Shown: one piece after another, positions 4,195 to 33,000 of the stretch
How the letters are laid out: each line of letters begins with the position of its first letter
Numbering within the stretch: the stretch's first letter is position 1
Source of the DNA: Octopus bimaculoides
Lineage: Eukaryota
Length of the DNA stretch: 33,000 bases
Assembly: GCF_001194135.2 (NCBI RefSeq)
Contig: NC_068995.1
Coordinates: forward strand, 55,079,782 to 55,112,781
Direction of reading: 5' to 3'
Notes under the pieces: generated by a model
What the model was told of the DNA's origin: nothing
The model's database searches: none
Seen by the model: only the letters and a program-made list of their open reading frames with translations
Position numbers and translations under genes: made by a program

Positions 4195-4830
4195 TTAGGT
4201 TGTCAAGAAAGTTCTCGCACATATCTCGGCTCAAACAAAACTTTATTAATCGAAATAAACACCATCAGAATCAACACACTTTTGCTAACGCGAAACAAGT
4301 TTATTTATGCCACTAGCGTAAAAATCCTACGTTTGGTGGCGATGAAATCGTTAAAGGCGTGTTTAGCATCGTCTTAGTTTTTGAAGCATTTCTAACGCAA
4401 AATGTTGTCGAGATGCTTCAAAAAGTGGTAGTCGGTAGGCGAGAGGTCTGGTGAGTATGGCAAATGAGGTAGAATTTCGTAGCCCAATTTGTTCAACTTC
4501 TGCAGTCTCAATTGTGCAACGTGCGGCCGAGCGTTGCCGTGGAGAAGAATTAGTCCTTTTCAATTGACGAATGCTGGCTTTTGTTGTCGGAGTTTCTTAT
4601 GCATTTCATCCATTTGCTAACAGTACTTCTCCGCTGTAATGGTTTCACCTCGATCCAAAAAGCTGTGATGGATGAGACCGGCCACAGACCACCAAACAGT
4701 CACCATGACCTTTTGGTGCAACTTTGGTTTCGGGAAGTGCCGTGGAGCTTCGTCGGCCTCCAACCACTGAGCTGAGTGTGGCCTGTTATCGTAAAGAATC
4801 CATTTTTCATCGCAAGTCACAGAGCTAAAA
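4195..4830 (-). mobile_element. Dead mariner (DD34D) transposon, 3' half with terminal inverted repeat
   Basis: Decayed transposase motifs TCDEKW (4800-4817), LHGNARPH (second catalytic D changed to G), YSPDLSPTDYHF and DFYASGINKLVSR*QKCVDSDGVYFD* (stop 4246-4248). TA followed by TTAGGTTG-type TIR at 4193-4220. Confidence 0.93.
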
Positions 4831-4979
4831 AATCTGTTTTATGGATTTTCGATCCGGCTTTCGCTGCCTTGCTGCGTTTGCCTACAATGAGGAGTTTTTG
4901 ATGCAACACCGATACTGATGAAATTCCTTCACTCGATATAACTTTTTATGGCACCTAGTATATCTATTGATTCATTTGG

Positions 4980-5700
4980 TTCATGGTCCTGAATGAGCTG
5001 GGACTCTGTTGTGCCTTTTTAAGTCGTGGAAATGCAGGGCTGCTTCGTCTTGAGGTCGTATCTGTAGACACGACTCTCGTCACCGTTGATCATCCTCGAC
5101 TTAAAGAAGAGATCATCAGCTGCAGGCTGACGGAAATCTAGACAGGCTTCGACTGGATATTTATTCTGTCTAGTTGCCAAAAATGGAGGACGATCTTTTC
5201 AGAGAGACGCCACATAATCAATTCAAATTATCTATACGAACTTATACGACAGACCAACGACATCAGAAATGTCCATTGATGTCCACCAACGATCATCATG
5301 CACACGCTGATGAATTTTCTCCACATTTCCAAGCATGATGTTCGTGGTAGGTTTTCCAGATCGCTCATTGTCATCTAGGGGAGTTCTTCCACATTTCAAG
5401 GGACTGTGCTGCTCGAAACATTGCGTACGAGCCATTGCCGCATTGTTGTAAGCTTACCGAAACACGCTAAATGTATGTGTAGACTTCCCAAGTGTAAAGC
5501 AAAAGTTCACGTAAGATCTTTGGTCCACCTTCTTGTCGGTGACCATATCGCAAACTACAAAATATGTGCGATCACAATATACACAAATTTCACAACTTGC
5601 TAATTAAACACAGCAATGCCACTTGGTACATTGCTGCATAAATGTCACCGCTAGGTCTCACTGTGCATGCAACTGTGTGCTGCCATCTGTTGGCGCACTA
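4980..5700 (-). mobile_element. Dead mariner transposon of a second lineage, 5' half
   Basis: ATG at 5546: MVTDKKVDQRSYVNFCFTLGKS...AMARTQCFE...DDNERSGKP...; frameshifted INGDESRVYRYD (5073-5084) and PRLKKAQQS. Left end not resolved. Confidence 0.85.
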
Positions 5701-7911: not shown

Positions 7912-7982
7912 CTAGTTAAGTAACAGAGTGCAGATGGCAATTGCCATGAATGCCAGCATCGGAGACTTTTTTGGTATCGCAC
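7912..7982 (-). CDS. Terminal coding exon of uncharacterised spliced gene; encodes GPI-signal-like tail (G)AIPKKSPMLAFMAIAICTLLLN*
   Basis: Acceptor gtattttcag at 7983-7992 (minus). Phase-1 entry matches the phase-1 end of exon 8933-8994. TAG stop at 7912-7914. Hydrophobic C-terminus. Confidence 0.75.
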
Positions 7983-8932: not shown

Positions 8933-8994
8933 CATCATTGGGTTTTTTTTCAAGATCATCCTCGTCGAAACTCTGAGATTTTATGTTACAGAAC
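8933..8994 (-). CDS. Internal exon, 62 nt, phase 2 to 1: (K)FCNIKSQSFDEDDLEKKPND
   Basis: Strong acceptor tttttctttttcag and donor GATG|gttagt. Open frame joins both neighbouring exons in phase. Confidence 0.8.
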
Positions 8995-9474: not shown

Positions 9475-9774
9475 TGAGGGTACAGGACATCACCAACATT
9501 AAGTATACAGTAGGTAATACGAAAACCAATGTACAAAATACGCAAATAACGAGACAGAAAAAGGGACATCGATATGTGTGTGTGTTTGTGTGCGTGTGCG
9601 TGTGTGCACATACATCAGTTCCTCCATAGAATTTGATGAACATGGAAGCATCTCTTTAGCAAATACTATAAATATGTAAATCCATTTACATATTAGTGTA
9701 TTAATGTTACACTAATAAGGAACAATTATTTTGCATTTTGATAATTCAAATATGAAATAAATAGTTAAACTCAC

Positions 9775-9867
9775 TTGTGCTCGTCAGCGGTCATTTTCTT
9801 ATCTTTGTCCAAACATTTCAGCACATGTTGCTGGAAATCTTCAATCACAATCTTGAAAGATCTCAAA
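9775..9867 (-). CDS. Internal exon, 93 nt, phase 2-2: LRSFKIVIEDFQQHVLKCLDKDKKMTADEH
   Basis: Long pyrimidine tract ttcttgtttcttatgcaag and donor CAA|gtgagt. Open, helical-looking frame. Confidence 0.8.
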
Positions 9868-10422: not shown

Positions 10423-11466
10423 CTGTTGAAATTCACACATGAGTACAGAATATTAAATGATATAGAAGTGTTTAGCGAAAATACTTTGTCAACAAGGAAG
10501 CGACACGTTATGAGAGTGTCAGTTACGTAACGACAGCTCTGTTTTTGAAGCATCAAAATTTAGTAGACACTGGGAAGTCGTTATACGGAAATACATAGTT
10601 ATGAATACTGGCAATCTATATATGGAGGGAACGAGAATGTAGGCAAAGGTACTACATGTTAAAATACCGGATAAGCAAAGTTCAATGTGATAGTTGACAT
10701 GGTTTGAATTTGGAGAGCAATCTGTTCCTTGATTGTCATGCTCAGTTTATGGATTTGATTAATTCGAAGAAACATTTGCATCAGTAGAATTCATTAGATG
10801 TAATGTTTATAGACATATGGTTTAAGAGTAAATTTGATTATCAAAAGACAAGACAAATTTGAACGTGTTTTGTTTTTCTGTATATAGCAAGAAGAGGAAA
10901 TGAGGAACACTTTAAAGTATAAAGATTCCAAACGCTGAATTATCGTTACTATTTGTAGCTTATTTAGTATTGTTCAACTGTAATAGATACTACGGGATGT
11001 GACGGATATTTATTAGTTATATTAAGATATAGATGTATACTTACAAACGCTGGTCTCTTACGAGTACAACAGTAACCTTATCGTTTGTGATCTTCATACT
11101 AAAATGGAAAGTTTGGAAATAATACTGCTATTCATTTTTATAGGTACAAAATACAATTAACATCATTATATAATTTTTATTTACTGCGCCTTAGAAGGCA
11201 GTGTATACGTGATCTCTTATTAAAGTTAAAATTATAATAGTAGATTTAATTGAAAATTTCTATATATAATAGCATATGTGAGTGTGTATGTGTATGAGAA
11301 GGAGACAGCGGAAAGACACACAGATAGGTATACAGACGCCCGCACACACAGTCAATTTTGCTGCATCTGTATAATAATCATATGGAACAGAAAATGTGTA
11401 GTACAGAAAAGTTTCGCTAAAAACAGCTCTCCCAAAATAAACAAGAATGTTTGCTTTTTATCTTAC

Positions 11467-13846: not shown

Positions 13847-13873
13847 TCTTTCCATTTATTGATATCTTGCACT
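13847..13873 (-). CDS. 27-nt micro-exon, phase 2-2: VQDINKWK
   Basis: Very strong acceptor atttcttttcatttctag and donor AGA|gtaagt. Open frame. Confidence 0.75.
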
Positions 13874-14469
13874 CTAGAAATGAAAAGAAATACCCATGTT
13901 ATTTTCTCTGATACAAACTTTGCAAATATTCTAAATGTTATAAACATTTCTTAGGGGGAAAACTGTTTGGATTATGCGGAATATAAATAACTACCAATAA
14001 AATCAGATATTTGTGGCATGAGACATACATATTAATTACGACCATACATGATAACAGTTTTAAAGAACAGAAAAAGGTATTTGTTGAGTATTCAGGCATT
14101 ATGCATAATGCAGATACATCGACAGGAGAATAAAAACATGTATGTTAAAATAAGGAGAACAGTCAAAAGGAATAGGTGAGGAAAGAAGAAATAAAGAAAG
14201 GGGAAGAGAAAATGAAAAGGTGTGTTAGATGGTAGTCAAAATACCATGAGAGGGATGGGAGAGGAGTAGCTGAGGGATAGGAAGAGATAAGAATGTAAGG
14301 AATGTATGAGGAGTGGAAGGTGGCGTAATACGTTTGAAAGGCACTAAGGGGGAGGGTTGAATATTTTTATTTTAGTCTTCTTTTCTCTCTTTCATCCTTT
14401 CATTTTCTCTTCCTGTCTTCATTTTGACACATCTCATCATTCTGATCATACACATCTACCCACCCGTCT

Positions 14470-15490
14470 ATCCACAAATACTACTAATACATTCTCAAAT
14501 GTTCATATACATCAAAAAATTCCTTCGAATGAGCAACACAGAATCCAAGGCTCCATACGTTGAAATTACTAAACATGAACTACTATTGGAACTTACTATG
14601 TACAGGAAACTTTTTACCACTTCTTTACAACACTTTACTCGGATAATAGAACTACAATTACAATATTTTATACTTTATTTCTTATCACATTCTCTTATGT
14701 CCCTCTATATTCCCTATCTCCTCACTTTTCCATAATAATTTCTATATCGAAAACAGATATTTACCTCTAGTTAACCATCTCACATCATGGCTGATGAAGG
14801 GATATCCATAATATCCCAGAAACAGCTGTAAGACTCTCGCTATATCTCTTTCTTTATATATGTCCTGAACACCCCTCACAAAATTGGCTTGTCTAATATA
14901 TATATATATATATTATGTAAGGTATGTTAGACGTATTGAAACCATCTAAGGGATAGAGGCATTCCTGGTAATTAGCTCAGTATGTATGGTCCTCGTTATA
15001 AGGTATACAGCAGTAGGCAATTCAAAAGGTAAACCATAGTTTAATGTATATATAGACGATAAGAAAATGGAGAAATAAATAACAATTAGAAGTGGATCTT
15101 TGCCGCTATAAAGCGATTATTAAATTAGTGAAGAAAGAACTCATTAAATAATGACTTTATAGGACCAACGATTCACTTCACATTGTTATGTAGAACAACT
15201 TTACCAAGAAGGAGACGAAAGCTGTAGCACTAAATTTTAAAATTATATTGAAAAGACATGGAAGTGATATCTTGACGACTGCTTCGTAATCTGGACAGAA
15301 TCTCTAAATACTCTGGAAGAGTTCAATATCCTTCTGAACAACCTACTCTCATCTCTCCAATTTAGAAAGGAGATGAGCTGTACCAAATTACCATTCATAG
15401 ATATAATGGTAATTAAAAAGGATCATCCATTACCACAGATATATAACGGACACACATCAATATCTGAATTTTCAAGTCATACCATCCACC
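14470..15490 (+). mobile_element. Penelope-like retroelement relic: endonuclease C-terminus and pseudo-LTR, then an internally deleted RT fragment
   Basis: RT block WK*YLDDCFVIWTESLNTLEEFNILLNNLLSSLQF...LPFIDIMVIKK.../TDTHQYLNF/KSYHP (YLDD at 15268-15279). Upstream EITKHE...LPLLYNTLL resembles the ORF end. Hammerhead core at 14791-14830. Confidence 0.85.
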
Positions 15491-15538
15491 ATATACAAAA
15501 CTTTGTTGGAATTCCTTTGATAAATATCTATATTTATT

Positions 15539-15631
<93 letters not shown>

Positions 15632-15648
15632 GTGTGTGTGTGTGTGTG
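15539..15648. repeat. Compound (TA)n(TG)n microsatellite
   Basis: Direct reading. Confidence 0.98.
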
Positions 15649-16580
15649 TTAATCAAAGGAATTCTAAATTTGACTGATTTTTCACGTTATATTTAAAATC
15701 GTATAATTATATAATATATTCAAATGATAGAATAGTAACTGTTCGTTCTGATTGAACTAGTACTTTCATGCATACATACATGCACGCATACATACATGCA
15801 TACATACATACATACATACATACATACATACATACGTATAAATCGAATAAACTGCAAATTTGGTCTTAAAATTACATTAAGTAAACAATCGTTACGCGTA
15901 TTTCACTGGCGAATTTTGATGCACTCGTTACCTAATCGGAAGCAGAATGGTCATTTAATATCGCACCATCGAAATAAAACCGTAATATACATCATTGTTA
16001 TTCACTAGCGTTAGTTGATAGGCAGAGAAAAACTGTTAACTGTGAGTAATATACTTTAGAATGTTCTTTCTATAGCGGAAAAGAAAAGTTCTATTTCCAA
16101 GTTAAAACAATTAATATTAGAGCTAAAATTTATTAATTTGCATATTTTGCTATGTCAGAATCTGTAGCAGGATACGTCTTAGTATACGTCAATCATACAT
16201 TTCGTTTGCTACTAGTTCTCTATTGTAGGAAAGATTAGTAATATTATGAATTTGGAGAAGCATACAATTTTCCAAATATAAATACTAGCTTCCAGGTACA
16301 AAAGCGTATTGTCGTTCGTGTTTGATTCTTCTACTCATGGTAGTTTTTACCCGAACAATTACGCCCTACTTTGATATAACTTAGTGTTATTCTAAAACAA
16401 GCTAACATAATAACTATTTCAAATTAATAATATATTTTTTATAAGAGAAACAATTTTTATCATTGACATTAAATGTTACTAGAAATATCAATGTTCACCA
16501 GATTAACCTTGGTATTAAACGTCCTCTTAGTGCAGAGGTAGGGCACATACACTTAAAAGAGATTGATATTGTATACTTAC

Positions 16581-16607
16581 TGAGATGCGCTGCTATCTGT
16601 ATCACTG
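16581..16607 (-). CDS. 27-nt micro-exon, phase 2-2: SDTDSSAS (CAGCAG tandem acceptor allows a 24-nt form)
   Basis: Acceptor ttccttacattcag and donor TCA|gtaagt. Open frame. Confidence 0.75.
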
Positions 16608-18250
16608 CTGAATGTAAAGGAAAATGAGACGGTAAATTTATTAACAAAAATGGTACATTGTCATGATATTCATGAAGTAAGATGTCATTTTAATGTTAAG
16701 GGTGACTCTAGGGAAACGAAACTTCTGTCTATAATTAAGGAAATAACAGGTGTTTCTGTTATGCATATTTTTCCCTGGGTGACCAAAAGTCTCGTCAGCG
16801 GATTATAATATTACAGTGATTAATGTGTATGTTTATGAAAATGTGTGTTTGTGTGTACGTGTGTGTATGTAGAAACCTGCTTGATTAGCGTAAGCTAATA
16901 TGCCATGCATCATAACACGATTTATTTCATTTTTATTGATGTTTAGTTCATTTTTATTTATGTCCGTGTGTGTATATTGAAACCAGTTTGATTAACGTAA
17001 ACTAGTGTGCCGTGCATCATAATACTATACGCCACATCATCATCGGATTTAGTTCCTTTTTACTGATGTTAGTTGAGAGGCACAGACAAACGATGAACCA
17101 CAAGCATATTCATCAGAATGCTGTGTATATAGGTGCAACAGAAATGTATTTGGCTTCTTTTTATTTATAAAATGTAAACATAATTCATATAGGAAGTAAA
17201 CATACATGAATTACATAATTTGCAACGTTCAAAACTGTTGCAGGATACTTTTCTGTTTACACAAATTATAAATCTTAACTGCGAGTATGAAGACTCTCTA
17301 AAACAGAACTCTTGTTGTTAATTCATAGAATAATCCATGTTTCAAAAGCCCTTATCTTCGATATCTTAATAGAAGCTTTCTCACACAATTCTTTGCTTCT
17401 TCGACTTAGGGTTATTTCTTCAATAACATTTGGAACTTAATATTATATACACCCGTTATGCAGATATATAAAACCGAACTTATATAGTATGTTGATATTT
17501 TATGTAATGCATATATTTCCTAAGGGAAGCTCATCAAATTAAAGTTGATTAGACACTATTCGAAATATTGTGAACTCTACCGGCTAAAGTTATAATCCAT
17601 ATACACATGGAGCCGGTCCATTGACGTGACAGTCATAAATTGGATATGGTTTGTTTCATTTTAAAACCTGTGCAACTGTGATATTAAGGAGGTTGATGAT
17701 TATCATGTATACTTTTAAAGGGATGCTGTTGTTAAAACATGGATCGTTTGGACATTTTGCATGTTGAATTTCTATTACCCATGTCCTGCAGGGCAGAGCG
17801 TAGTTGAGGTTATTTCGTTACGCTAGCAGTTGACGAGGGATATGCACGAAAGTTCACTAGGATATAATATCATTCATTATAAATATAGATTCTGTAGAAT
17901 ATCTGAGGTTTAAATTGTGAGTTAGATATGTATATAGCATATTACGTACAAGATTATTTAAGTAGTATATGCTTTGCTTGTGTATGTAATTTCTGCATTC
18001 GATATCTCGGTACTAAGGAGGGGTTCGGAATCTGGTGTATAAGATGAATAAGGATGAATCCCACAAAGACGTTTAATGAAAGGCTGCATTTTCTCATAGG
18101 AGATTTAACTGGATTTAACTCCGTGCCTAATAATATAGAGTTCCCTAAATTTCTATCTCGCTGGAACACAAATCTTGATAAACTGTTTGCCTAAGTGATA
18201 GAATATTACATCAATCGAGTATTTAGGACAATTTGTGTTTCAATACTTAC

Positions 18251-18286
18251 TCTCCGATTCCCAGGAAGCTTGAGAGAGCGTCAGTT
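18251..18286 (-). CDS. 36-nt micro-exon, phase 2-2: TDALSSFLGIG
   Basis: Acceptor atatttttttcag and donor AGA|gtaagt. Open frame. Confidence 0.8.
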
Positions 18287-18413
18287 CTGAAAAAAATATT
18301 GACATATAAACAATTATATATATATATATATGTATATAGCCAACAGGTGAGAACAAGAAATCTTCAGTTTAGTAATGCTCGAATGATTCAAACTAAGACT
18401 TTCATGTTCTTAC

Positions 18414-18443
18414 ATGTAGCCAATTCCGCTGGGTAACAAATGA
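18414..18443 (-). CDS. Candidate 30-nt micro-exon, phase 2-2: HLLPSGIGY
   Basis: Acceptor gattcctcttatag and donor CAT|gtaaga. Open, symmetric, and its GIG echoes the neighbouring exon. Leaves a 127-nt intron. Confidence 0.45.
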
Positions 18444-19171
18444 CTATAAGAGGAATCATTACATATAACACCTTGCTGTTGATATACAAAATATGTATAT
18501 ATGTATGCGTGCAAAACAAGAGAAATCAAAGGCGGAAAACCTTCTATATTTAAGTATAAATATTTATATTAATGCATCAAACTTAGAATACAAGCAACAA
18601 AGAGAATTGAAAAAGAGGAAGTAAAGCGTTATATAACCCCAGAGTCGAAGCTTAACCTTTGTCCTAACAAGGAATAGAATTCCATCAATAATACTTTATT
18701 TGCAAGGAACAGTCTGCAAGGGAAATCTCCACACCTGTACCAGAGGTCACGAGAAAAGACGTTCTAAGCTATACTCTTCAAATATATTGTTTAATTTATC
18801 ATAAGCGTTGTATACGACGTCCATATGCATAGGTATTCAAGACAAACTATCATTGAAAAGTGCTTATTATTGCAAATATGCATCTCCCTCATTTTGGGCT
18901 ATTATCACATTAAAGTTTGCAAGTATTTCGTGTGCTTTTCGTTTCCGATGTTCAACTATGCGCTGTTCAGAACGTTGTAGACTCACAAACAAAACCCAAT
19001 TTATATATGTATGTGTGTAAATGTATGGATAAATATATGTTTCAATGCAATTACCAATTCATCAAAAATGAGAAACGTTCAAATACATCGTAAAATTAAC
19101 ATTCGATTTATATATGCTGGATTGTATAAGACTTGTTTAATCTGGATATTCAGTTTTATTCACGGTATATG

Positions 19172-19378
19172 AAAGCAGCGTGATGTAGTAGCAAAACAAG
19201 TGTCTTGTTCTGAGATCACGTGCTAAAACAAAAACTATTGCAGCGTGGAAGATGTCTGTAAGCCATTTAAGAACACACAAAAACCGTTAATTTGACTTGT
19301 ATATTCAAATTTAATTTCTATCAAAATATTTTCATCGCATTGAAACCTCGACCTGTTCACTGACAAAATTTCGTGAGT
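19172..19378 (+). mobile_element. Probable cephalopod interspersed repeat (SINE-like)
   Basis: gcagcgtggaag...aagccatttaagaacacacaaaaaccgtta...gacctgttcactgacaaaa, recalled from octopus repeats. Not verified. Confidence 0.4.
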
Positions 19379-19412
19379 GAAATTATATGAAATTGTTTTT
19401 AAATATACTTAC

Positions 19413-19451
19413 GCAATATCTCCTAAAAATTCAGAAAATAGGCGGCTTACA
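19413..19451 (-). CDS. 39-nt micro-exon, phase 2-2: VSRLFSEFLGDI
   Basis: Acceptor ttattctttcatttcag and donor TGC|gtaagt. Open frame. Confidence 0.8.
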
Positions 19452-19724
19452 CTGAAATGAAAGAATAAATTTACTATAAGAGATATATGATATAAATGAG
19501 AAAAAATTAATTAATAACTTCTTAGGGTATGATAAGAATTTTTTTTAATCCCTCTTGCTTAACTTTAAATGTAACTTTAAGTAACATTTGAATATATATT
19601 TTTGAAAGAATGCGCACTTTATCCAATTCGCCATTCGTGAAATAGCGACCAAATAATTCCTCTTATGACTTTTGAATGAATGTTATATACATATATACAC
19701 ACACACACGCACACACACACACAC

Positions 19725-19781
<57 letters not shown>

Positions 19782-21303
19782 AAAATATATATACATACAC
19801 NNNNNNNNNNNNNNNNNNNNNNNNNNNNNNNNNNNNNNNNNNNNNNNNNNNNNNNNNNNNNNNNNNNNNNNNNNNNNNNNNNNNNNNNNNNNNNNNNNNN
19901 NNNNNNNNNNNNNNNNNNNNNNNNNNNNNNNNNNNNNNNNNNNNNNNNNNNNNNNNNNNNNNNNNNNNNNNNNNNNNNNNNNNNNNNNNNNNNNNNNNNN
20001 NNNNNNNNNNNNNNNNNNNNNNNNNNNNNNNNNNNNNNNNNNNNNNNNNNNNNNNNNNNNNNNNNNNNNNNNNNNNNNNNNNNNNNNNNNNNNNATATAT
20101 ATATATATATATCTTGTTCGGACCCTGTGATGTGTACGCAAGATCGCAAGGATACAATGTTATTAATTATAAATATAGATTCTGTAGAATATTTGAGGTT
20201 TAAATCGTGAGTTGAATATTTATGTAGCGTACAAGAGTTAAACTACTATATGCTTTAATAGTTTTGTTACAGTGAGTAATCTAAAATATAAGAGGTTTCC
20301 ATGTGTCCATCTTATCAAATATCTAAAATTAGTTTATTGGAAGTCAAAGAGAAATAAATTGCAGGTTAATAGTTTGTAACCATGTTTTAGTGCATAGTGA
20401 AATTTGACCGCAGCGTAACTCCTAGTATATGTTTTGTCTATACAGGTTTGAGGTTGTGTTCAAGTGTTCAAGTTTTAGGAATTCTATTAAAAAGAAGTCT
20501 TTCGAATTGAATAGGTGAGTTCTGTCATAATATGGCGAGTGGGCGGGGGTGTTTGTGCTTGGGTACGTGGTTTGGGAATATACTGTAAAAAGAATTATCT
20601 ATGCTTCTTTCTTTGCCTTTTTTCCGTTGAGAGAATATGGAGAGTGTTTATGGATGGCATTTCGAAGGATTTAGAAGGAATTATTTTACATTTGCTCTGT
20701 GTGATTGTGTTGTTTTGTCTTTGTAATTGTGTGAGTATGTGTGAAAGTGTGTGTGTTTCTGTGTGCGTATGTGTGCTTGTCTGTGTCTATGTATGCGTGT
20801 TGGATTTGTTCTTTGGAACTAGCTTTCTACATGTGTCTATTTTTTTGTAATTTGGAGGAATTTGTGCATGTGAGTTATTATGGTGCTCATGTGTGTAGTT
20901 GTCACATAAGGTGGGTCAGGGTGAATTGGTGTACATTTGACTGATTTGCAAGTGTCGATAATGTTGGTCCATATGCGTATTAGTAGCTCACCTATAGATT
21001 AATAAGGCAAGGCGTGTGGTGAGTATGTAGAATACGAAAAATAAATGTAAGTATAGATGAGATGGCCAGAATGGTCTTTGAATATATATATNNNNNNNNN
21101 NNNNNNNNNNNNNNNNNNNNNNNNNNNNNNNNNNNNNNNNNNNNNNNNNNNNNNNNNNNNNNNNNNNNNNNNNNNNNNNNNNNNNNNNNNNNNNNNNNNN
21201 NNNNNNNNNNNNNNNNNNNNNNNNNNNNNNNNNNNNNNNNNNNNNNNNNNNNNNNNNNNNNNNNNNNNNNNNNNNNNNNNNNNNNNNNNNNNNNNNNNNN
21301 NNN

Positions 21304-21617
21304 GCATCTGCATGCATCCCCTCAATTAAAGCCATGATTTTGAGGAACCAATTGAGATGGTGTGGCCATATTGTTCGAATGGCAGATGAACGCATGCCGA
21401 AACAGCTGTTTTATGGTGAGCTTGCAGAGGGGAAACGTTATCGGCATAAACCTAAAAAAAGGTTTAAGGATGGCATAAGGACTGCTATGAAGTCAATTGG
21501 AATGGCTCCAAAAGATATAGAAGTCCTCGCTTCAGATCGAGTTGGATGGCGAACAAGGGTGTGGAATGGAGTGAAAGCATTTGAAGAGGCCAGGATGATG
21601 CAAGCAGGGCTCAAGAG
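21304..21617 (+). mobile_element. RTE-clade LINE, 3' end of ORF
   Basis: IPSIKAMILRNQLRWCGHIVRMADERMPKQLFYGELAEGKRYRHKPKKRFKD, the typical RTE C-terminal QLRWxGH...R.PK..LYGEL motif. Confidence 0.9.
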
Positions 21618-21945
21618 ACATTTAATAAGAGGAATGACCACTAAAGTGGATTCATAATATGCTAAAGATAGAACGTCAAATCGCCTTAACACGAAAAATC
21701 TCAGCCAACGCCAGAATGTAAAAATAAACAAATAGGAGTTACAGATATTTGCATTTTGCATTACGCAAGTGTCAATAACGAACTCGTGATATGAAGGTAA
21801 TCGTTTTAGTTTGCATATTTTCATCTGTCTTGTTTATTTTTACATTCTGGCGTTTGTTGAGATTTTCCTTCGTAGTAAGGCGATTTGATGTCTATATTTA
21901 GCATACTAGGAACCCACTTTAGTGGTCATTCCTCTTATTAATTGT
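21618..21945. mobile_element. Foldback/MITE-like element with about 115-bp imperfect inverted arms
   Basis: 21618-21731 versus reverse complement of 21830-21945 (taataagaggaatgaccactaaagtgg...aaatcgcctta...aacgccagaatgtaaaaataaacaa). About 98-bp spacer. Confidence 0.8.
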
Positions 21946-21988
21946 AATATAATTGATTAAAATCAATTTATACCCTAATTATCATATG

Positions 21989-21991
<3 letters not shown>

Positions 21992-22048
<57 letters not shown>
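21992..22048. repeat. (TA)n microsatellite
   Basis: Direct reading. Confidence 0.99.
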
Positions 22049-22051
<3 letters not shown>

Positions 22052-22084
22052 ACTCAGAGACCTACTCAAAGTGGCAGAACCGCT

Positions 22085-22532
22085 CACAAATGTACGAATG
22101 TTTCAGACGTTCCCAAAATTGCCAAAAAGATTTCGGTATGAGACTCGTGTATGTCACGTTTGTGCCAAAACTGCTTTCAGATGTCGAAGGAGACACTCCA
22201 GTTTCAGTTGCGCAAGATTTCCTTCATTGTGTAAATAAATATGAAACTCTTTTGAAATATTTGCCTATGCCTCTGAGTAGGTATCACCAAGCTTTTGGTA
22301 AAATTTGATACATATTCTCTGCTCTACTTTTTCAATGATCAATGCGACTATCACACGCTACGCACCTTCATTTCAGGCACTGCTGTAAACGGTGGAAGGG
22401 AGCTAGAACATTATAACTTAGTATACACGCACACCAGAGTTGCATGTCAGTCTGCGCCAAGCGGCTTTACTCAGATTGTTTTAGGTTCGTTACTATAGGA
22501 ACACTTCGGAGACTTATTGATCAGACAACATA
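22085..22532 (+). mobile_element. Internally deleted mariner relic
   Basis: FGMRLVYVTFVPKLLSDVEGDTPVSVAQDFLHCV resembles the mariner linker (VPxxL motif). TIR-like end cggagacttattgatcagacaacaTA at about 22507-22532. Confidence 0.65.
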
Positions 22533-22792
22533 CATACATATGCCTACTATATGTAGGTGTATATATNNNNNNNNNNTATATAAGACATATGTATATATGT
22601 ATGTGTGTGTGTATGTATGTATATTTTTGTACGCATGTATGTATGTGGATGTTTAGGAAATGCTACTTTTTATAGTTTTCTCTACTTTCAGTTCCAAAGG
22701 TTAAAGAATAGGCATTTTGTATATACACCTATAAATGATATGTTATAGGAAACAACTTTCACATTAATATACTGCAAAATTCAATAACTTAC

Positions 22793-22822
22793 ACCTTTAG
22801 TGCTGCTTTGCCAAGAGCAGGT
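22793..22822 (-). CDS. 30-nt micro-exon, phase 2-2: PALGKAALK
   Basis: Acceptor ttttttttcctcaacag and donor GGT|gtaagt. Open frame. Confidence 0.8.
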
Positions 22823-23290
22823 CTGTTGAGGAAAAAAAATATATTATTAATAAAATATAGTGGAATTCATGTGTAGACACACACACAAATACATATACAT
22901 CGTTCTTAAAGATATATATTTTGATTCAATGAACCTTCAAATAGTACACTCTTTAGACTCTTTCTTTCACCGTTTCTCCTTAAATTATTAGGTTGGAAAG
23001 AAAACCTCGTATTTTGACAATAAATTTGAGATAATCAGTCTGAAGTAAATTATTATTTACCATCAGATAAGCAGTTATTCATTAATTATTTTTTTTACAT
23101 TCTAAATTTTTTACCTTCTTAACAGATTATATCAAAGAATAGTATTTTTAATATTCGTAAAGATTTTATTCCGTTAAAACGACTTTAGAACTGACTTATC
23201 TCATATGTGCGTGTGTGAGAGGATGTGTGCGCATGTGAGAGAATATGTATATGTGTAATTGTAAAGGTGTACAGTGCACTTTTAACATTA

Positions 23291-23506
23291 ATGTTCTTTT
23301 CTACTCTAGGCACAAGACTCGAAATTTCGCGGGAGGGGACAATCGATTAGACTGACCATAGTACGCAACTGGTAATTAATTTGTCGCCCCTGTAAGAATT
23401 AAAGACAAAGCCGATTTCAGTTGAATTTCAACTCAGAATGTAAAGACAGACGAAATACCGCTATGCATTTCACCCGGCGTACCAACGTTTCTGAAAGCTC
23501 CACGCC
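23291..23506 (-). mobile_element. tRNA-derived SINE, near full length
   Basis: Reverse complement aligns along its length with 29589-29810, including the ctagagtagaaaagaa tail. Confidence 0.85.
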
Positions 23507-23546
23507 TTCATTTAAGATTAATATTACTTAAGAAAGTATAACTCAC

Positions 23547-23579
23547 AGGGCACGTTTCCTCCTGAATAATTGTTCTGAT
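23547..23579 (-). CDS. 33-nt micro-exon, phase 2-2: SEQLFRRKRA (carries the furin motif)
   Basis: Acceptor tttcttttattacag and donor CCT|gtgagt. Open frame. Confidence 0.8.
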
Positions 23580-25075
23580 CTGTAATAAAAGAAACTTTTC
23601 TCATTAATACATCAAATATAATGGAAGTCGTGTGTGTGTGCGTGTGTGTGTGTGAGCGCGCGCGCGTGTAATAAGAGGAGGGTTATGATATCCAGGCTGA
23701 TACTGAATTTCTCGTTGTAAAATGTCAAGGCTGGTTTCTTCACATGGTGCGTTTTATGGTAAATTTCTTATTAACTTCCATCCAATGTAACAATTTTTCA
23801 CTGGCTACTTAGGGTGTAAAGTACAATACTTATAATAAGGAGAATGAAAAGTTTGAACATTCAGATTTTATGTTTATTTGCAATTGTTTTATTCATAATA
23901 ATTGTCCGAAACGTGTTTGGATCGTATTAATTGTATATGGCTGCATATTTAAATGTTGCGATTTATGCATTATTATTATTACGATCTCTTCAGGGTGTAT
24001 AACTATGACATTTTTCAAACAGATTTTCTTTCGTTATTAGTATGAAATCGGCTTGGTAGCAGTGGTAATAAACCATGACGCTTTTCGCTCTGCTGTTTTC
24101 CGCAACTGACTGTTTGGGTAAAATGCAGCAGTGTTTGTTGAAGCTGGCAAATTTTCTTCTTCCGTTTGGGAGTGTTTATCTATAGAATACTTTTCTTTTG
24201 AATGATTCTACATTCTTTATAGTCACATGGTTTTTTAATGGATTTCAGTGTTGGTTGTATTATTTGAATTTTTGTGAAGGTTGTTTATAGTAGTAGTTAC
24301 TACTATTTTTTTTTTATTCCCAAAGGAAACCCTCTCCAGTTGGTTAACGACGTAACCTGTGTCCAATATATTGCCAACAGGAGAGCGAACTCCTGCCAGC
24401 TAGCGAAATGACAGGACCAGAAGACTAGACTGGTAACCATAATATGTATTGTAACTGTTATATATTTATATATGTTGTCTTCGGAATGAGCCTGTATGTT
24501 ACTGAAGCATGTCAGCTGAAAGTATGGATGTATTTAGGCACATGTATACACACTAGTGGTATGCAGGCATATATGAGTGCGCGACTCTAAGTGTATTTAC
24601 AAATACTGTTGTACGGCTTTATATGTGTGTGTGTGTGTGTGTCCGCTAACATCCCTCGCCCAGTGAATGGTCATCCGTAAATGACTGCGGATCCTACCTC
24701 GCAGTGGGGTGTAAGAAAAAAGAGAAAAGTCTGTCACTCGTTCTACATCCAGATATCCAACAGATACCAATAATCGCATACCGGTGACACACACGTGTGT
24801 GTGGGTGGGTGTGTGTGTGCATATTTGTATCTATGCCCTTAACACATGTCTCTTAACCTTAATGTAATACTTTTTGACAGTGTTGCTCTCTTTCTTCTAT
24901 GATCTGCGGCTTTAATTTACGATGTGTGTGTGTGTATGTGTATGTGTGTGGGTGCGTGTCTGTCTGTATACCTGTGTGAGTGTGTGTTCATGAACGGGAT
25001 TGCACACCGCTCCCCGTTAACCTAATCTAAACGTGCTTTCCTCAATAACTGAATTGAAAAATAGCCGCTAGTCCC

Positions 25076-26481: not shown

Positions 26482-26619
26482 CGTTTAAATCCTTTGCCCT
26501 TGGGAATGGCAAAAGGATTGTCAAAAACCTTCAGAAAACAAGCTGTAGCTTTTCTGAATTTTTTTTTTTCAGACTGTTTGAAGTGGAAAATCGGAAACAG
26601 TAGTAGGCGATGTATATAT
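26482..26619 (-). CDS. 138-nt exon, phase 2-2: YIHRLLLFPIFHFKQSEKKKFRKATACFLKVFDNPFAIPKGKGFK
   Basis: Donor ACG|gtaagt and acceptor tgacttattcacag. 46 open codons. An internal phase-0 acceptor at 26574-26576 is an alternative. Confidence 0.7.
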
Positions 26620-27975: not shown

Positions 27976-28071
27976 CCTTCATCCCAAACTTTATCCATAG
28001 CGTCCATCATTACCGAATGAGAATAGGCCAGTTTTTTCCCGAAGTCTCCATCGTCCGAGCATGCTCCTCCG
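27976..28071 (-). CDS. 96-nt exon, phase 2-2: GGACSDDGDFGKKLAYSHSVMMDAMDKVWDE
   Basis: Acceptor attcttatattttag and donor AGG|gtaagt. Only the phase-2 frame is open. Confidence 0.8.
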
Positions 28072-30149: not shown

Positions 30150-30233
30150 CTCATAAAGAAGTTTTCCCACGCATGCGCTCTTGTCTTGTATTTCATGAGA
30201 AGTAATTCATTATCATTTTTCTTAGCAGAAGAC
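30150..30233 (-). CDS. 84-nt exon, phase 2-2: SSAKKNDNELLLMKYKTRAHAWENFFM
   Basis: Acceptor ctattttcattctag and donor GAG|gtatgt. Lies within track ORF 30074..30295. Confidence 0.8.
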
Positions 30234-30689
30234 CTAGAATGAAAATAGCGAGAATAGAAATTCAAATATTGTGGCAGAATGATTTGAGTGTCCAAAAGGT
30301 TACTTTAAGTTTAGATGAATTAAAATACTCTTAAGAAATGAATATATTCCATGGCAACGTCTGGTGGGGGGGGAAGCAATCTATTTGAGTAAGATTTAAG
30401 ATTTCTATATGAAGCTGAAGGTCAGAAATAGAAGGGGAGATAACCAGTCGATTGTATAAATGAAAGAATTTGACTGGGATTTTATTTTATTGATCTCCGA
30501 AAAATGCATAATGATCTTGTCTTCGGTAAGATTTCAAATCACAGTCTAACGAACCTAATATTTTCCAGGACTTTGTGTCCGACAGTCTAACAGCTCCGTT
30601 TTGAGGATGATTAGGGTGCAACATATTTAGCACAAATATCAATTTCAACTCCTTTTTTGAATTTTATTACCAATGTTTTTGTATTTTGA

Positions 30690-31205
30690 AATTTAAACAT
30701 GTTCTAGTATATTTTTTGTTTCTTTTTTGAATTTTTGCTGTTTGCTCAAATGTGTAGCGAGCTAGATTGTCTGTTGGGGGTTTACGTTTCAGTTCATCGT
30801 TATATTTGAGCCATGTTCGACCGACATTCCTGTCCCCAGTTTCAAGGTGGCAGTACATGAAGACTTTGGTTATTCTTTCATCACTCATGTCCACAGTATG
30901 ACAAACCCAGCGCAATTGCGACTGTATAAGATCTTCATTCTTCTTGTCTTACACTTGTTAAACATGTCGATATCAGGCACCCTGTCATTTAGTGAATAGA
31001 TCCAGACTGCCCTGATACATCCTCTGTGGAAGAAGTCTAGATGGGCCGATGTGCAACCTATAAGGTGTCCACGATTCTTTGCCATACAGGAGTGTAGAAA
31101 GATTGCAGCGATGGACACATCTACTTTGTTGTCGCGTTTAATGTCACTTTCATTCCACAGGTGAAGAAAAGTTTGGCAAATGTGTTGGCTGCTCTCGCAA
31201 GACGG
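30690..31205 (-). mobile_element. RTE-clade LINE fragment (post-RT region)
   Basis: Frameshifted RLARAANTFAKL...TLLYGKESWT...FHRGCIRAV...DRVPD...QLRWVCH...DERITKVFMYCHLETGDRNVGR. Confidence 0.85.
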
Positions 31206-31470
31206 TTCACACACGCACGTACATAAACACACTCACACATATATACGCACGTACGTACACGTTTTTGTATATGTGTGTGTGTATTTGTAACGTATGATAT
31301 GGGTGACACTATTAACAATTTAACAACCTAAAGGCAAATTAATAGAAGCCACTAACATGACAGAAGGTTCTAATTATTACATGTATTTCTGGAAATAAGA
31401 GCCAAAACAAATATCCACAAGGTACAGTTTTAATGACTGTCAAAGGGTCCCTAGTGGATAAAGCCAAATC

Positions 31471-31731
31471 GACGTTTCGGATGTTGACATAGAGCATTCT
31501 AATCCTCATCAGTGTCTCTTTCCACGCCTAGGATTAAACTCAACAATCTTTGAAACACATGCACTGATTTTAAAACAGTAAAATGAAAACAGCAAATAAT
31601 ATAGGTGGCTAATTGGAAATTTAAAGAACCTAAAGGCAAATTGATAGAAATCACTAAAGTTGAGTTTAGTCCTAGCTGCGGTAAGAGTCACTGATGATGA
31701 TAAAATGCTTTGCATCAAATTCCGAAATCGT
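31471..31731. repeat. About 74-bp inverted repeat carrying two hammerhead-like cores (probable inverted Penelope pseudo-LTRs)
   Basis: 31471-31544 (minus) versus 31659-31731 (plus): gttgagttta.tcctag...aagag.cactgatga...aatgct...tccgaaa. Confidence 0.7.
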
Positions 31732-31849
31732 TAGCAGCATACCTCCTCTTAACAGTCGTTGAGATAGTGCTTTGTGGCTATTTAAGTTGTTTTTACTTTT
31801 ATTACTAGCAATAGCTGTACTAATTAATACCCTCTACCACTTTAGTGAC

Positions 31850-31867
31850 CTCTCTCTCTCTCTCTTC

Positions 31868-31904
<37 letters not shown>

Positions 31905-31915
31905 TCCCTCTCTCC
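31850..31915. repeat. (CT)n microsatellite
   Basis: Direct reading. Confidence 0.97.
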
Positions 31916-32461
31916 CATTGGTAGCTAAATATTTTTCATTTTGCTTCAACAAGGGAACCAGCTGTGTTCATATGCAGTGCTCTCCAAGAATTCGTGAAGT
32001 AAACTACATGGGACTGTTGATGCTCGTCTTCATTCGGAATGAGAAATTCACAGGTTTATGCGAGGTAGTACGAGATTTCAAAATAGATACACATAAAGGA
32101 GAATGTATCTTATGAGGATGTCTTAATTCTTAACTCTCACAATAACAAATTTTGCAAAGTTCATGCACATAGTTATTATCTGCGAGAACGTTGAAGTAAC
32201 CATATTTTTAAACATATATCTGTGTGTGTATGTGTGTATATGTCTGTGCGTGCGCGGGATGCGTGTATGGGTGTGCGGGTTTGTGTACTTTCATTAATAT
32301 ACATCATGAGTTTTGTTGACCCTGTGTATATTAACAATTATGGCAGTTAAAAGAATTTCCACAACGAACATGGTCCAAGGATGTGCATGCTCAATTTCTA
32401 GAGAAAGAACTGGTGTATATATCCAGCTTCACGGATTACAAGGAGACAATAAAAAGCTTAC

Positions 32462-32500
32462 ATGTCAATAATGAGTAAAACGTTGAAAGCTAGGCATGCG
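32462..32500 (-). CDS. Candidate signal-peptide exon, 39 nt, phase 2-2: ACLAFNVLLIID
   Basis: Donor CAT|gtaagc with a weak acceptor (taagttcag). Hydrophobic, and joins exon 30233 as ...LLIIDMSSA/KKND. A possible ATG-AG|gt first exon lies at 32873-32877 (weak donor). Confidence 0.4.
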
Positions 32501-33000
32501 CTGAACTTAGACTTCGTTCAGAGTCAAGGACAATTTGGAGCATTATATCTAGGTCAGTAAATATTAGAGGGTGGCACGAAATTACACCAGCTTTCGGTAC
32601 TCTGCAATCACAGCGATCATTCCGTTCCGTTCTCGAATTATACCTACAGTTATCACATTCGGTAAAAATGTCTTACGGTTAAGTTGGTACCTATGAATTT
32701 CCCTGAGGGGAGATTACATATTTATCAACATCACCTATTCCTTTGGGAGGAATCATTTGTAATCTTCGAAACATATGTTGGAAATAAAAGAATTCATTTA
32801 ACTTATGCGTATTACTGCATTTATTAAATTTTTATATTTACTCAATTGACCAAAATAACAGAGAGTTTCTACCTCATAAACAGGAGTTACACCACAGTCA
32901 TTTTGTGATCGTTGCTATCCTGGTATCTATTAACCAATTTATTTTGTCGGAGTTAACTATTAACTCAAAGAAAATAAATACATATAATTAAATATATATA

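What the first reader, a model, noticed from the sequence alone, without database searches (positions are those of the whole stretch)
13847..23579. Micro-exon-gene architecture: six or seven consecutive symmetric 27-39 nt exons over about 10 kb
Seen: exons of 33, 30, 39, (30), 36, 27 and 27 nt, all multiples of 3 and all phase 2, so any subset can be skipped in frame. They encode exactly the cleavage site, amphipathic helix and linker. Established: schistosome micro-exon genes use this design to diversify secreted proteins by exon skipping. I know of no such description in cephalopods. Inference: a combinatorial system that tunes helix length and can remove the furin site by skipping one exon.
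Basis: partly seen in the sequence, partly recalled or inferred. Interest (0 to 1): 0.8.

Follow-up and report, generated by a model that had tools for sequence, protein, structure and literature searches.

The report
Octopus gene with six tiny exons
The six tiny in-frame exons are real and belong to an uncharacterised, fast-evolving Octopus protein gene already annotated in RefSeq; annotated isoforms drop only one of them, so the design resembles the schistosome micro-exon genes only in part.

Summary
The window is Octopus bimaculoides chromosome CM046615.1, read in reverse. The finding lies in gene LOC106881480 on the minus strand. RefSeq protein XP_052829315.1 (250 aa) maps exactly onto 13 coding exons. 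All six are symmetric and phase 2.

The bracketed seventh exon (30 nt, 18443-18414) is not real.

The three assembly gaps sit in one intron. That intron is collinear with the gap-free O. sinensis orthologue.

The same exon plan is kept in five relatives from O. bimaculoides, O. sinensis and O. vulgaris. The family has an invariant R-x-K-R site, four invariant cysteines and no detectable homologues elsewhere. dN/dS is about 1.

RefSeq isoforms X3 and X4 skip exactly the 30-nt exon. A paralogue isoform skips its 39-nt exon. A tandem acceptor adds or removes one serine.

No isoform lacks the furin-site exon. Micro-exons make up only 26% of the coding sequence. This is therefore a partial, convergent analogue of micro-exon genes, with modest documented splicing variety. 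Protein function is unknown.

The parts
30150..30233 (-). 84-nt symmetric phase-2 exon (SSAKKNDNELLLMKYKTRAHAWENFFM). The RefSeq start codon is the internal ATG at 30196. The frame is open from the acceptor at 30233.
   Evidence: same 81/84-nt exon in all relatives
27976..28071 (-). 96-nt symmetric phase-2 exon (GGACSDDGDFGKKLAYSHSVMMDAMDKVWDE). The homologous exon is skipped in isoform X3 of paralogue LOC106881475.
26482..26619 (-). 138-nt symmetric phase-2 exon (YIHRLLLFPIFHFKQSEKKKFRKATACFLKVFDNPFAIPKGKGFK). Contains an 11-A run at 26569-26559.
23547..23579 (-). Micro-exon 1, 33 nt: SEQLFRRKRA. Carries the whole invariant R-x-K-R site. Donor GTGAGT.
22793..22822 (-). Micro-exon 2, 30 nt: PALGKAALK(V). 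Cassette exon, absent from RefSeq isoforms X3 and X4. Absent altogether from the distant paralogue.
19413..19451 (-). Micro-exon 3, 39 nt: VSRLFSEFLGDI. The homologous exon is skipped in O. sinensis LOC115220522 isoform X2.
18251..18286 (-). Micro-exon 4, 36 nt: TDALSSFLGIG.
16581..16607 (-). Micro-exon 5, 27 nt (SDTDSSAS) or 24 nt through the tandem CAGCAG acceptor at 16604. Ser/Asp linker. Isoforms X2 and X4 use the 24-nt form.
13847..13873 (-). Micro-exon 6, 27 nt: VQDINKWK, with an invariant Trp.
11045..11098 (-).
9775..9867 (-). 93-nt symmetric phase-2 exon (LRSFKIVIEDFQQHVLKCLDKDKKMTADEH). The donor caa|GTGAGT is used. The overlapping TGA at 9776-9774 is not the stop codon.
8933..8994 (-). 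62-nt exon, phase 2 to phase 1 (FCNIKSQSFDEDDLEKKPND).
7912..7982 (-). Last coding exon (GAIPKKSPMLAFMAIAICTLLLN) plus TAG. Hydrophobic C-terminal tail.
18414..18443 (-). Rejected: not part of the gene.

Best explanation
The region is the middle of Octopus bimaculoides gene LOC106881480 on the minus strand. The gene belongs to a small, clustered protein family that I found only in the genus Octopus.

Shown:
- The gene has 13 coding exons in the window. The first 11 introns are all phase 2, so ten consecutive internal exons are symmetric.
- Six of these in a row are micro-exons of 27-39 nt, spread over about 10 kb. All have perfect GT[AG]AGT donors.
- This exon plan is conserved in four close relatives. 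It is present in reduced form (four micro-exons) in a distant paralogue.
- The six micro-exons encode, in order: an invariant R-x-K-R site; a roughly 35-residue Gly/Ala/Leu-rich segment with the conserved motifs LGK, FxGFLGNIA and GFLGIG; a Ser/Asp linker; and a conserved Trp-containing piece.
- Annotated transcripts remove the 30-nt exon in this gene and the 39-nt exon in a paralogue. A tandem acceptor toggles one serine.

Inferred:
- The protein enters the secretory pathway. Relatives have a signal-peptide exon; here it probably lies in an assembly gap.
- It is cut by a furin-like convertase at R-x-K-R.
- It is held at the membrane by its hydrophobic C-terminal tail, as a GPI signal or a tail anchor.
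- Cleavage then exposes the hydrophobic helix as a new N-terminus. Skipping the 30-nt exon shortens that helix by ten residues and removes two lysines.
- The micro-exon array therefore works as a modest splice-based length and charge tuner of a fast-evolving, probably membrane-interacting segment. It is not a large combinatorial generator.
For: - Exact spliced mapping of XP_052829315.1 to the window.
- The window is identical to CM046615.1.
- Splice-site and frame statistics: 6 observed against 0.67 expected.
- The same exon sizes (33/30/39/36/24-30/27) and phases occur in L001-L004, and 27/39/36/27 in L006.
- Isoform alignments show exact single-exon deletions.
- R-x-K-R and four cysteines are invariant in 7 proteins.
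- Relatives start with hydrophobic signal-like N-termini encoded by a 47-53-nt first exon that ends in phase 2.
- The expected position of that exon falls in the N run at L005 4127-5196.
- A helix is predicted over residues 106-135, although confidence is low.
- muH is 0.55, p = 0.004, for this gene.
- dN/dS is 1.19 in the micro-exon region and 0.91 elsewhere, against the O. sinensis orthologue.
- Micro-exons are 67-81% identical to the orthologue. Flanking introns are often more conserved, and the two alternatively spliced exons have the best-conserved flanks at 87-89%.
Against: - Isoform evidence is only RefSeq model annotation. I could not see reads. An exact look-up of the one skip isoform tried (P0020) found nothing on record, and the window gene's own X2 product was not on record either.
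- Only one micro-exon is skipped per gene in the annotation, and the furin-site exon is never skipped.
- Cleavage, secretion and anchoring are untested.
- This gene's signal exon was not found.
- The O. sinensis orthologue ends before the hydrophobic tail, so anchoring is not universal in the family.
- The structure model has mean pLDDT 41.
- dN/dS near 1 is also what relaxed constraint would give.
- Amphipathicity is not conserved across the family.
Confidence: 0.7

Rival explanations
1. The micro-exon array is essentially constitutive. It is a frozen by-product of how the gene was built (exon duplication or intron gain, all in phase 2). The few skip isoforms are low-level splicing noise with no function.
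For: Each gene has at most one annotated micro-exon skip. Exon sizes are rigidly conserved across paralogues. All micro-exons have perfect strong donors, as expected for efficient constitutive recognition.
Against: Two different micro-exons are skipped in two genes of two species. The exon skipped here is the one that the distant paralogue lacks altogether. The flanks of the alternatively spliced exons are the best conserved.
Confidence: 0.25
2. The gene is a precursor of a released, antimicrobial-type amphipathic peptide, and exon skipping tunes that peptide.
For: The R-x-K-R site is invariant and sits directly before the helix. The hydrophobic moment is significant in this gene. Evolution is fast, as in host-defence genes.
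Against: The segment has net charge about 0 (range -4 to +1 across the family). No second processing site follows it. Amphipathicity is not conserved. The segment is followed by about 110 further conserved residues with two invariant cysteines and a hydrophobic tail, so it looks like the N-terminus of a larger cleaved subunit.
Confidence: 0.08
3. The exons are chance open frames, or an artefact of the assembly gaps.
For: AT-rich sequence gives many short open frames, and three gaps lie in the span.
Against: Exact mapping of a RefSeq protein. Six sites observed against 0.67 expected. Identical architecture in five other loci, four of them gap-free. Flanks are collinear across all three gaps.
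Confidence: 0.01

Closest known systems
Schistosome micro-exon genes (MEGs)
   Same: Runs of very short symmetric exons separated by kilobase introns. In-frame exon skipping gives protein variants. Products are secreted or membrane-anchored with a signal peptide. Families are lineage-restricted and clustered. dN/dS is high. Some products form amphipathic, membrane-binding helices (PMC4350168, PMC10526429).
   Different: In MEGs most of the coding region lies in micro-exons, typically 10-20 exons that are often 15 nt long. Here six micro-exons make up 26% of the coding sequence. There is no sequence homology. Only single skips are annotated. MEGs are reported as restricted to platyhelminths.
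Vertebrate fast skeletal troponin T (TNNT3), exons 4-8
   Same: A block of consecutive small exons of the same phase class that are alternatively spliced. The block is thought to have arisen by exon shuffling or duplication (PMC2447309).
   Different: TNNT3 is an intracellular muscle protein. Its combinatorial use is extensively documented. There is no cleavage site or secretion, and no homology.
Furin-activated membrane proteins with a hydrophobic neo-N-terminus (e.g. class I viral fusion subunits) - resemblance recalled from general knowledge, not tested
   Same: An R-x-K/R-R site lies directly before a Gly/Ala/Leu/Phe-rich hydrophobic segment. This is followed by helical regions, a disulfide-capable Cys-x14-Cys loop and a C-terminal hydrophobic anchor.
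   Different: The protein is tiny (about 250 aa) and its gene has many introns. Sequence and profile searches found no homology. The structure model is too poor to compare.

Membership tests
Micro-exon gene (MEG) class, as defined for schistosomes | Most of the coding region is made of very small exons | tested here: not met
   192 of 750 coding nt (26%) lie in exons of 39 nt or less. 76% lies in symmetric internal exons of any size. Definition taken from PMC4350168 and PMC10526429.
Micro-exon gene (MEG) class, as defined for schistosomes | Micro-exons are symmetric (length a multiple of 3, same phase) | tested here: met
   All six are multiples of 3 and phase 2-2. All 64 combinations stay in frame.
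Micro-exon gene (MEG) class, as defined for schistosomes | Exon skipping generates protein variants | tested here: met
   RefSeq X3/X4 lack the 30-nt exon. A paralogue's X2 lacks its 39-nt exon. This rests on annotation only, and reads were not seen.
Micro-exon gene (MEG) class, as defined for schistosomes | Signal peptide; product secreted or membrane-anchored | tested here: inconclusive
   Relatives have signal-like N-termini on a separate first exon. This gene's first exon was not found and probably lies in an assembly gap.
Micro-exon gene (MEG) class, as defined for schistosomes | Sequence relationship to a platyhelminth MEG family | tested here: not met
   The only homologues found are Octopus proteins. 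There are no Pfam or PDB matches.
Proprotein-convertase (furin-type) substrate | Conserved R-x-K/R-R motif in a secretory-pathway protein | tested here: met
   R100, K102 and R103 are invariant in 7 family members. Actual cleavage cannot be tested here.
Cationic amphipathic antimicrobial peptide precursor | Net positive, amphipathic peptide bounded by processing sites | tested here: not met
   Net charge is 0 here and -4 to +1 across the family. muH is significant only in some members. There is no downstream processing site.
EndoU / XendoU (PF09412) | Significant match to the family profile, and a catalytic domain | tested here: not met
   A 27-residue similarity to 2c1w (E = 1.3) disappears when a family profile is used. 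There is no Pfam hit. No catalytic-domain match exists in the window or in the full-length relatives.
GPI-anchored or tail-anchored surface protein | C-terminal hydrophobic stretch after small residues | tested here: inconclusive
   Tails such as GAIPKKSPMLAFMAIAICTLLLN are present in 5 of 7 members. No predictor was available. The O. sinensis orthologue lacks the tail.

The most novel reading that the evidence does not exclude
Octopuses independently evolved a micro-exon cassette system in a lineage-specific, rapidly evolving secreted/surface protein family. Splicing, together with gain and loss of whole micro-exons among paralogues, would diversify the hydrophobic peptide that furin cleavage exposes. 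That peptide would act on membranes, in host defence, gamete interaction or another cell-surface interaction. This would be a convergent counterpart of the schistosome micro-exon genes.
Probability: 0.2. Interest if true: 0.7.

Novelty: new variant of a known kind. Interest (0 to 1): 0.5.

Why it matters
Arrays of symmetric micro-exons used to vary a secreted protein are textbook only for parasitic flatworms. A conserved, partly alternatively spliced array in an Octopus-only gene family would be a second, independent case of this design.

The family has all introns but the last in one phase, and its coding sequence evolves about as fast as its introns. That gives a tractable example of how orphan genes are built exon by exon.

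The result also carries a practical caution. Because every exon is symmetric, the reading frame cannot reveal missing or false exons.

Tried and rejected
1. EndoU homology. A phmmer hit to XendoU 2c1w (E = 1.3) and a tblastn hit from a remembered XendoU sequence (E = 0.004) covered 27 residues of the 138-nt exon. I rejected this because the family profile finds nothing in the PDB, there is no Pfam match, and the full-length relatives have no catalytic domain.

2. The first word-indexed protein search, using my spliced 121-aa model, returned nothing, although the exact RefSeq protein exists. The exhaustive search with the single 45-aa exon is what found the family.

3. My PWM splice-site scoring with human-like exonic positions was uninformative, because these exons have non-consensus exonic ends. 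I replaced it with a motif-count test.

4. A search for the signal-peptide exon in 30234-33000 and in the 8 kb upstream in L005 found only repeats.

5. Structure prediction gave mean pLDDT 41, so I made no fold search.

6. Exact look-ups of the X2 product of this gene (P0008) and of the skip isoform P0020 found nothing on record.

7. Tests for exon duplication. The 33-nt and 30-nt exon flanks resemble each other in 4 of 5 genes (z = 5-7). The flanks also contain interspersed repeats and microsatellites, so duplication is unproven.

8. Other ORFs inside the introns gave no significant Pfam hits.
Full report
**Identity of the locus**

The window is AT-rich, repeat-rich and has eight N runs. It is 100% identical, in reverse complement, to positions 5197-38196 of locus L005. 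L005 comes from Octopus bimaculoides chromosome CM046615.1 (GCA_001194135.2) and has the same gaps.

An exhaustive HMMER search with the 45-residue translation of one exon (window:26484-26618:-) found two real Octopus protein clusters. Follow-up searches named them. The window's gene is LOC106881480, 'uncharacterized protein'. It has four RefSeq isoforms: X1 (250 aa, XP_052829315.1), X2 (249 aa), X3 (240 aa) and X4 (239 aa).

**Checking the observation**

- 23579-23547 (33 nt)
- 22822-22793 (30 nt)
- 19451-19413 (39 nt)
- 18286-18251 (36 nt)
- 16607-16581 (27 nt)
- 13873-13847 (27 nt)

Each is 1 nt + whole codons + 2 nt, follows a pyrimidine tract and AG, and is followed by GTAAGT or GTGAGT.

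A motif-count test found 6 such sites on the minus strand and 1 on the plus strand. First-order Markov simulations gave 0.67 +/- 0.84, with a maximum of 4 in 500 runs.

Splicing these six exons with seven others reproduces XP_052829315.1 exactly.

The bracketed seventh exon (18443-18414) is absent from every isoform and paralogue. In the O. sinensis orthologue it has neither the AG nor the GT. I reject it.

**Assembly gaps**

All three gaps flagged by the scan's program lie in the single intron between the 30-nt and 39-nt exons. The pieces on either side align in the same order and orientation to the gap-free O. sinensis intron. One alignment block (window 22792-22126) spans the 10-N gap. The 294-N gap stands opposite about 3.6 kb of O. 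sinensis sequence.

A scan of that O. sinensis sequence found only one AT-rich, unconserved candidate exon. The reading frame is unaffected. A hidden unannotated exon cannot be formally excluded.

**Full gene model**

Coding exons on the minus strand:

| Exon (window coordinates) | Length | Note |
|---|---|---|
| 30233-30150 | 84 nt | annotated ATG at 30196 |
| 28071-27976 | 96 nt | |
| 26619-26482 | 138 nt | |
| six micro-exons (listed above) | 33, 30, 39, 36, 27, 27 nt | |
| 11098-11045 | 54 nt | |
| 9867-9775 | 93 nt | |
| 8994-8933 | 62 nt | |
| 7982-7915 | 68 nt | followed by TAG |

The first eleven introns are all phase 2, and the last is phase 1.

The TGA at 9776-9774 is overlapped by the donor GTGAGT that is actually used. 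Because all these exons are symmetric, frame continuity alone cannot detect a missing or a false exon.

**Conservation**

I fetched and re-spliced five related loci:
- L001: O. sinensis LOC115220523, the closest relative
- L002: O. bimaculoides LOC106876345
- L003: O. sinensis LOC115220522
- L004: O. sinensis LOC115220626
- L006: an O. vulgaris distant paralogue

The four close relatives share this plan: a signal exon of 47-53 nt ending in phase 2; then 81/84, 96 and 138/150 nt; then 33, 30, 39, 36, 24-30 and 27 nt; then 54 and 93 nt. The distant paralogue has micro-exons of 27, 39, 36 and 27 nt only. It lacks the 30-nt exon and the linker exon.

Every micro-exon in every locus has a GT[AG]AGT donor. 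The three O. sinensis genes lie within about 140 kb of one chromosome.

**Splicing variation**

- Isoforms X3 and X4 of this gene lack exactly PALGKAALKV, which is the 30-nt exon.
- X2 and X4 use the tandem acceptor (CAG|CAG) at 16604, which removes one serine.
- O. sinensis LOC115220522 isoform X2 lacks exactly the 13 residues of its 39-nt exon.
- O. bimaculoides LOC106881475 isoforms skip the 96-nt exon and show the same one-serine wobble.
- No isoform of any member lacks the 33-nt furin-site exon.

All 64 skip combinations would stay in frame and free of stop codons. From my own knowledge, NCBI's pipeline reports alternative variants only when transcript evidence supports them. I could not inspect that evidence. 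An exact look-up of the one skip isoform I tried (P0020) found nothing on record, and this gene's X2 product was not on record either.

**The protein**

There is no Pfam or PDB relative, by single sequence or by family profile. A 27-residue resemblance to XendoU does not survive the profile test, so I treat it as chance.

Seven family members share an invariant R-x-K-R, four invariant cysteines (two before and two after the site), and conserved motifs after the site: LGK, FxGFLGNIA and GFLG[IV]G. Relatives begin with hydrophobic, signal-like N-termini. Most end in a hydrophobic tail preceded by small residues.

This gene's signal exon is not in the window. Its expected position coincides with an N run upstream. 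That would explain why RefSeq starts the protein at an internal Met.

AlphaFold2 gives an all-helical but low-confidence model with pLDDT 41.

The post-cleavage segment has a significant hydrophobic moment in this gene (0.55, p = 0.004). This is not consistent across the family, and net charge is about 0.

**Evolutionary rate**

Against the O. sinensis orthologue, dN/dS is 1.19 in the micro-exon region and 0.91 elsewhere. Against the paralogues it is 0.5-1.0.

Micro-exons are 67-81% identical to the orthologue. The 100 nt of intron on each side are often more conserved. The highest flank values (87-89%) belong to the two exons with annotated alternative splicing. Exon length, phase and splice sites are strictly kept while the coding sequence drifts or diversifies.

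**Interpretation**

The structural claim is correct. The functional claim is only partly backed. The design allows combinatorial skipping, but what is documented is one cassette exon per gene plus a 3-nt wobble.

The most likely role is modest tuning of the length and charge of a hydrophobic helix. That helix becomes the N-terminus of the C-terminal subunit after convertase cleavage of a secreted or surface protein. Cleavage, secretion, anchoring and any membrane activity are all inferred.

Compared with schistosome micro-exon genes (PMC4350168, PMC10526429), this gene shares symmetry, skipping, lineage restriction, fast evolution and a secretory nature. It fails their defining feature, because only 26% of the coding sequence lies in micro-exons, and it is unrelated in sequence. 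Troponin T exons 4-8 (PMC2447309) are another analogue.

I found no paper on this family or on such architecture in cephalopods. The gene models themselves are already public.

Noticed in passing
window 16604-16609 (-): Tandem CAGCAG acceptor gives 27-nt or 24-nt versions of micro-exon 5 (plus or minus one Ser). The same one-serine wobble occurs in paralogue LOC106881475.
   Followed up: yes
window 9774-9780 (-): An in-frame TGA directly after ...ADEHK overlaps the donor GTGAGT that is actually used. Read naively, it looks like the stop codon, but the gene continues for two more exons.
   Followed up: yes
window 33000 and beyond; L005 378-3534 and 4127-5196: The signal-peptide exon present in all relatives is missing here. 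Its expected position (about 3.6 kb upstream of the 84-nt exon in O. sinensis) falls in an assembly gap, so the RefSeq models start at an internal Met.
   Followed up: partly
window 23600-23650 and 22840-22890 (-), upstream of the 33-nt and 30-nt exons: A shared motif of about 50 nt (..ACACA[CT]GA[CA]TTCCA[TC]TATATTT..TATTAAT..) and similar downstream flanks (z = 5-7 in 4 of 5 genes). This could reflect an old duplication of the exon or a shared repeat. It is unresolved, because the flanks also carry interspersed repeats.
   Followed up: partly
window micro-exons versus L001: Micro-exons are less conserved between species (67-81%) than much of their flanking intron sequence. The two alternatively spliced exons have the most conserved flanks (87-89%).
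   Followed up: partly
L001 38295-38317: The O. sinensis orthologue's last exon stops after 20 nt (…GATAKNL*), so it lacks the hydrophobic C-terminal tail. Some family members may therefore be soluble.
   Followed up: no
window 4620-4838 (-), with neighbouring ORFs at 4395-4559 and 5235-5453: Degenerate mariner-type transposase fragment (Pfam PF01359, E = 2.4e-20), downstream of the gene.
   Followed up: partly
window 26559-26569 (-): A run of 11 A inside the 138-nt coding exon (encodes KKK). It is prone to sequencing or slippage errors, and is in frame as assembled.
   Followed up: no
L003 4377-4403, L004 25270-25296, L006 16143-16169 and 31640-31666: An interspersed repeat (CAGTATCGCCCGGCGTTGCTC...) repeatedly mimics a phase-2 27-nt exon with AG/GTAAGG. 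It is a source of false micro-exon calls in these introns.
   Followed up: no
window 26517-26597 (-): A 27-residue similarity (48% identity) to the N-terminal region of XendoU (PDB 2c1w). It was not confirmed by profile searches and is probably chance.
   Followed up: yes
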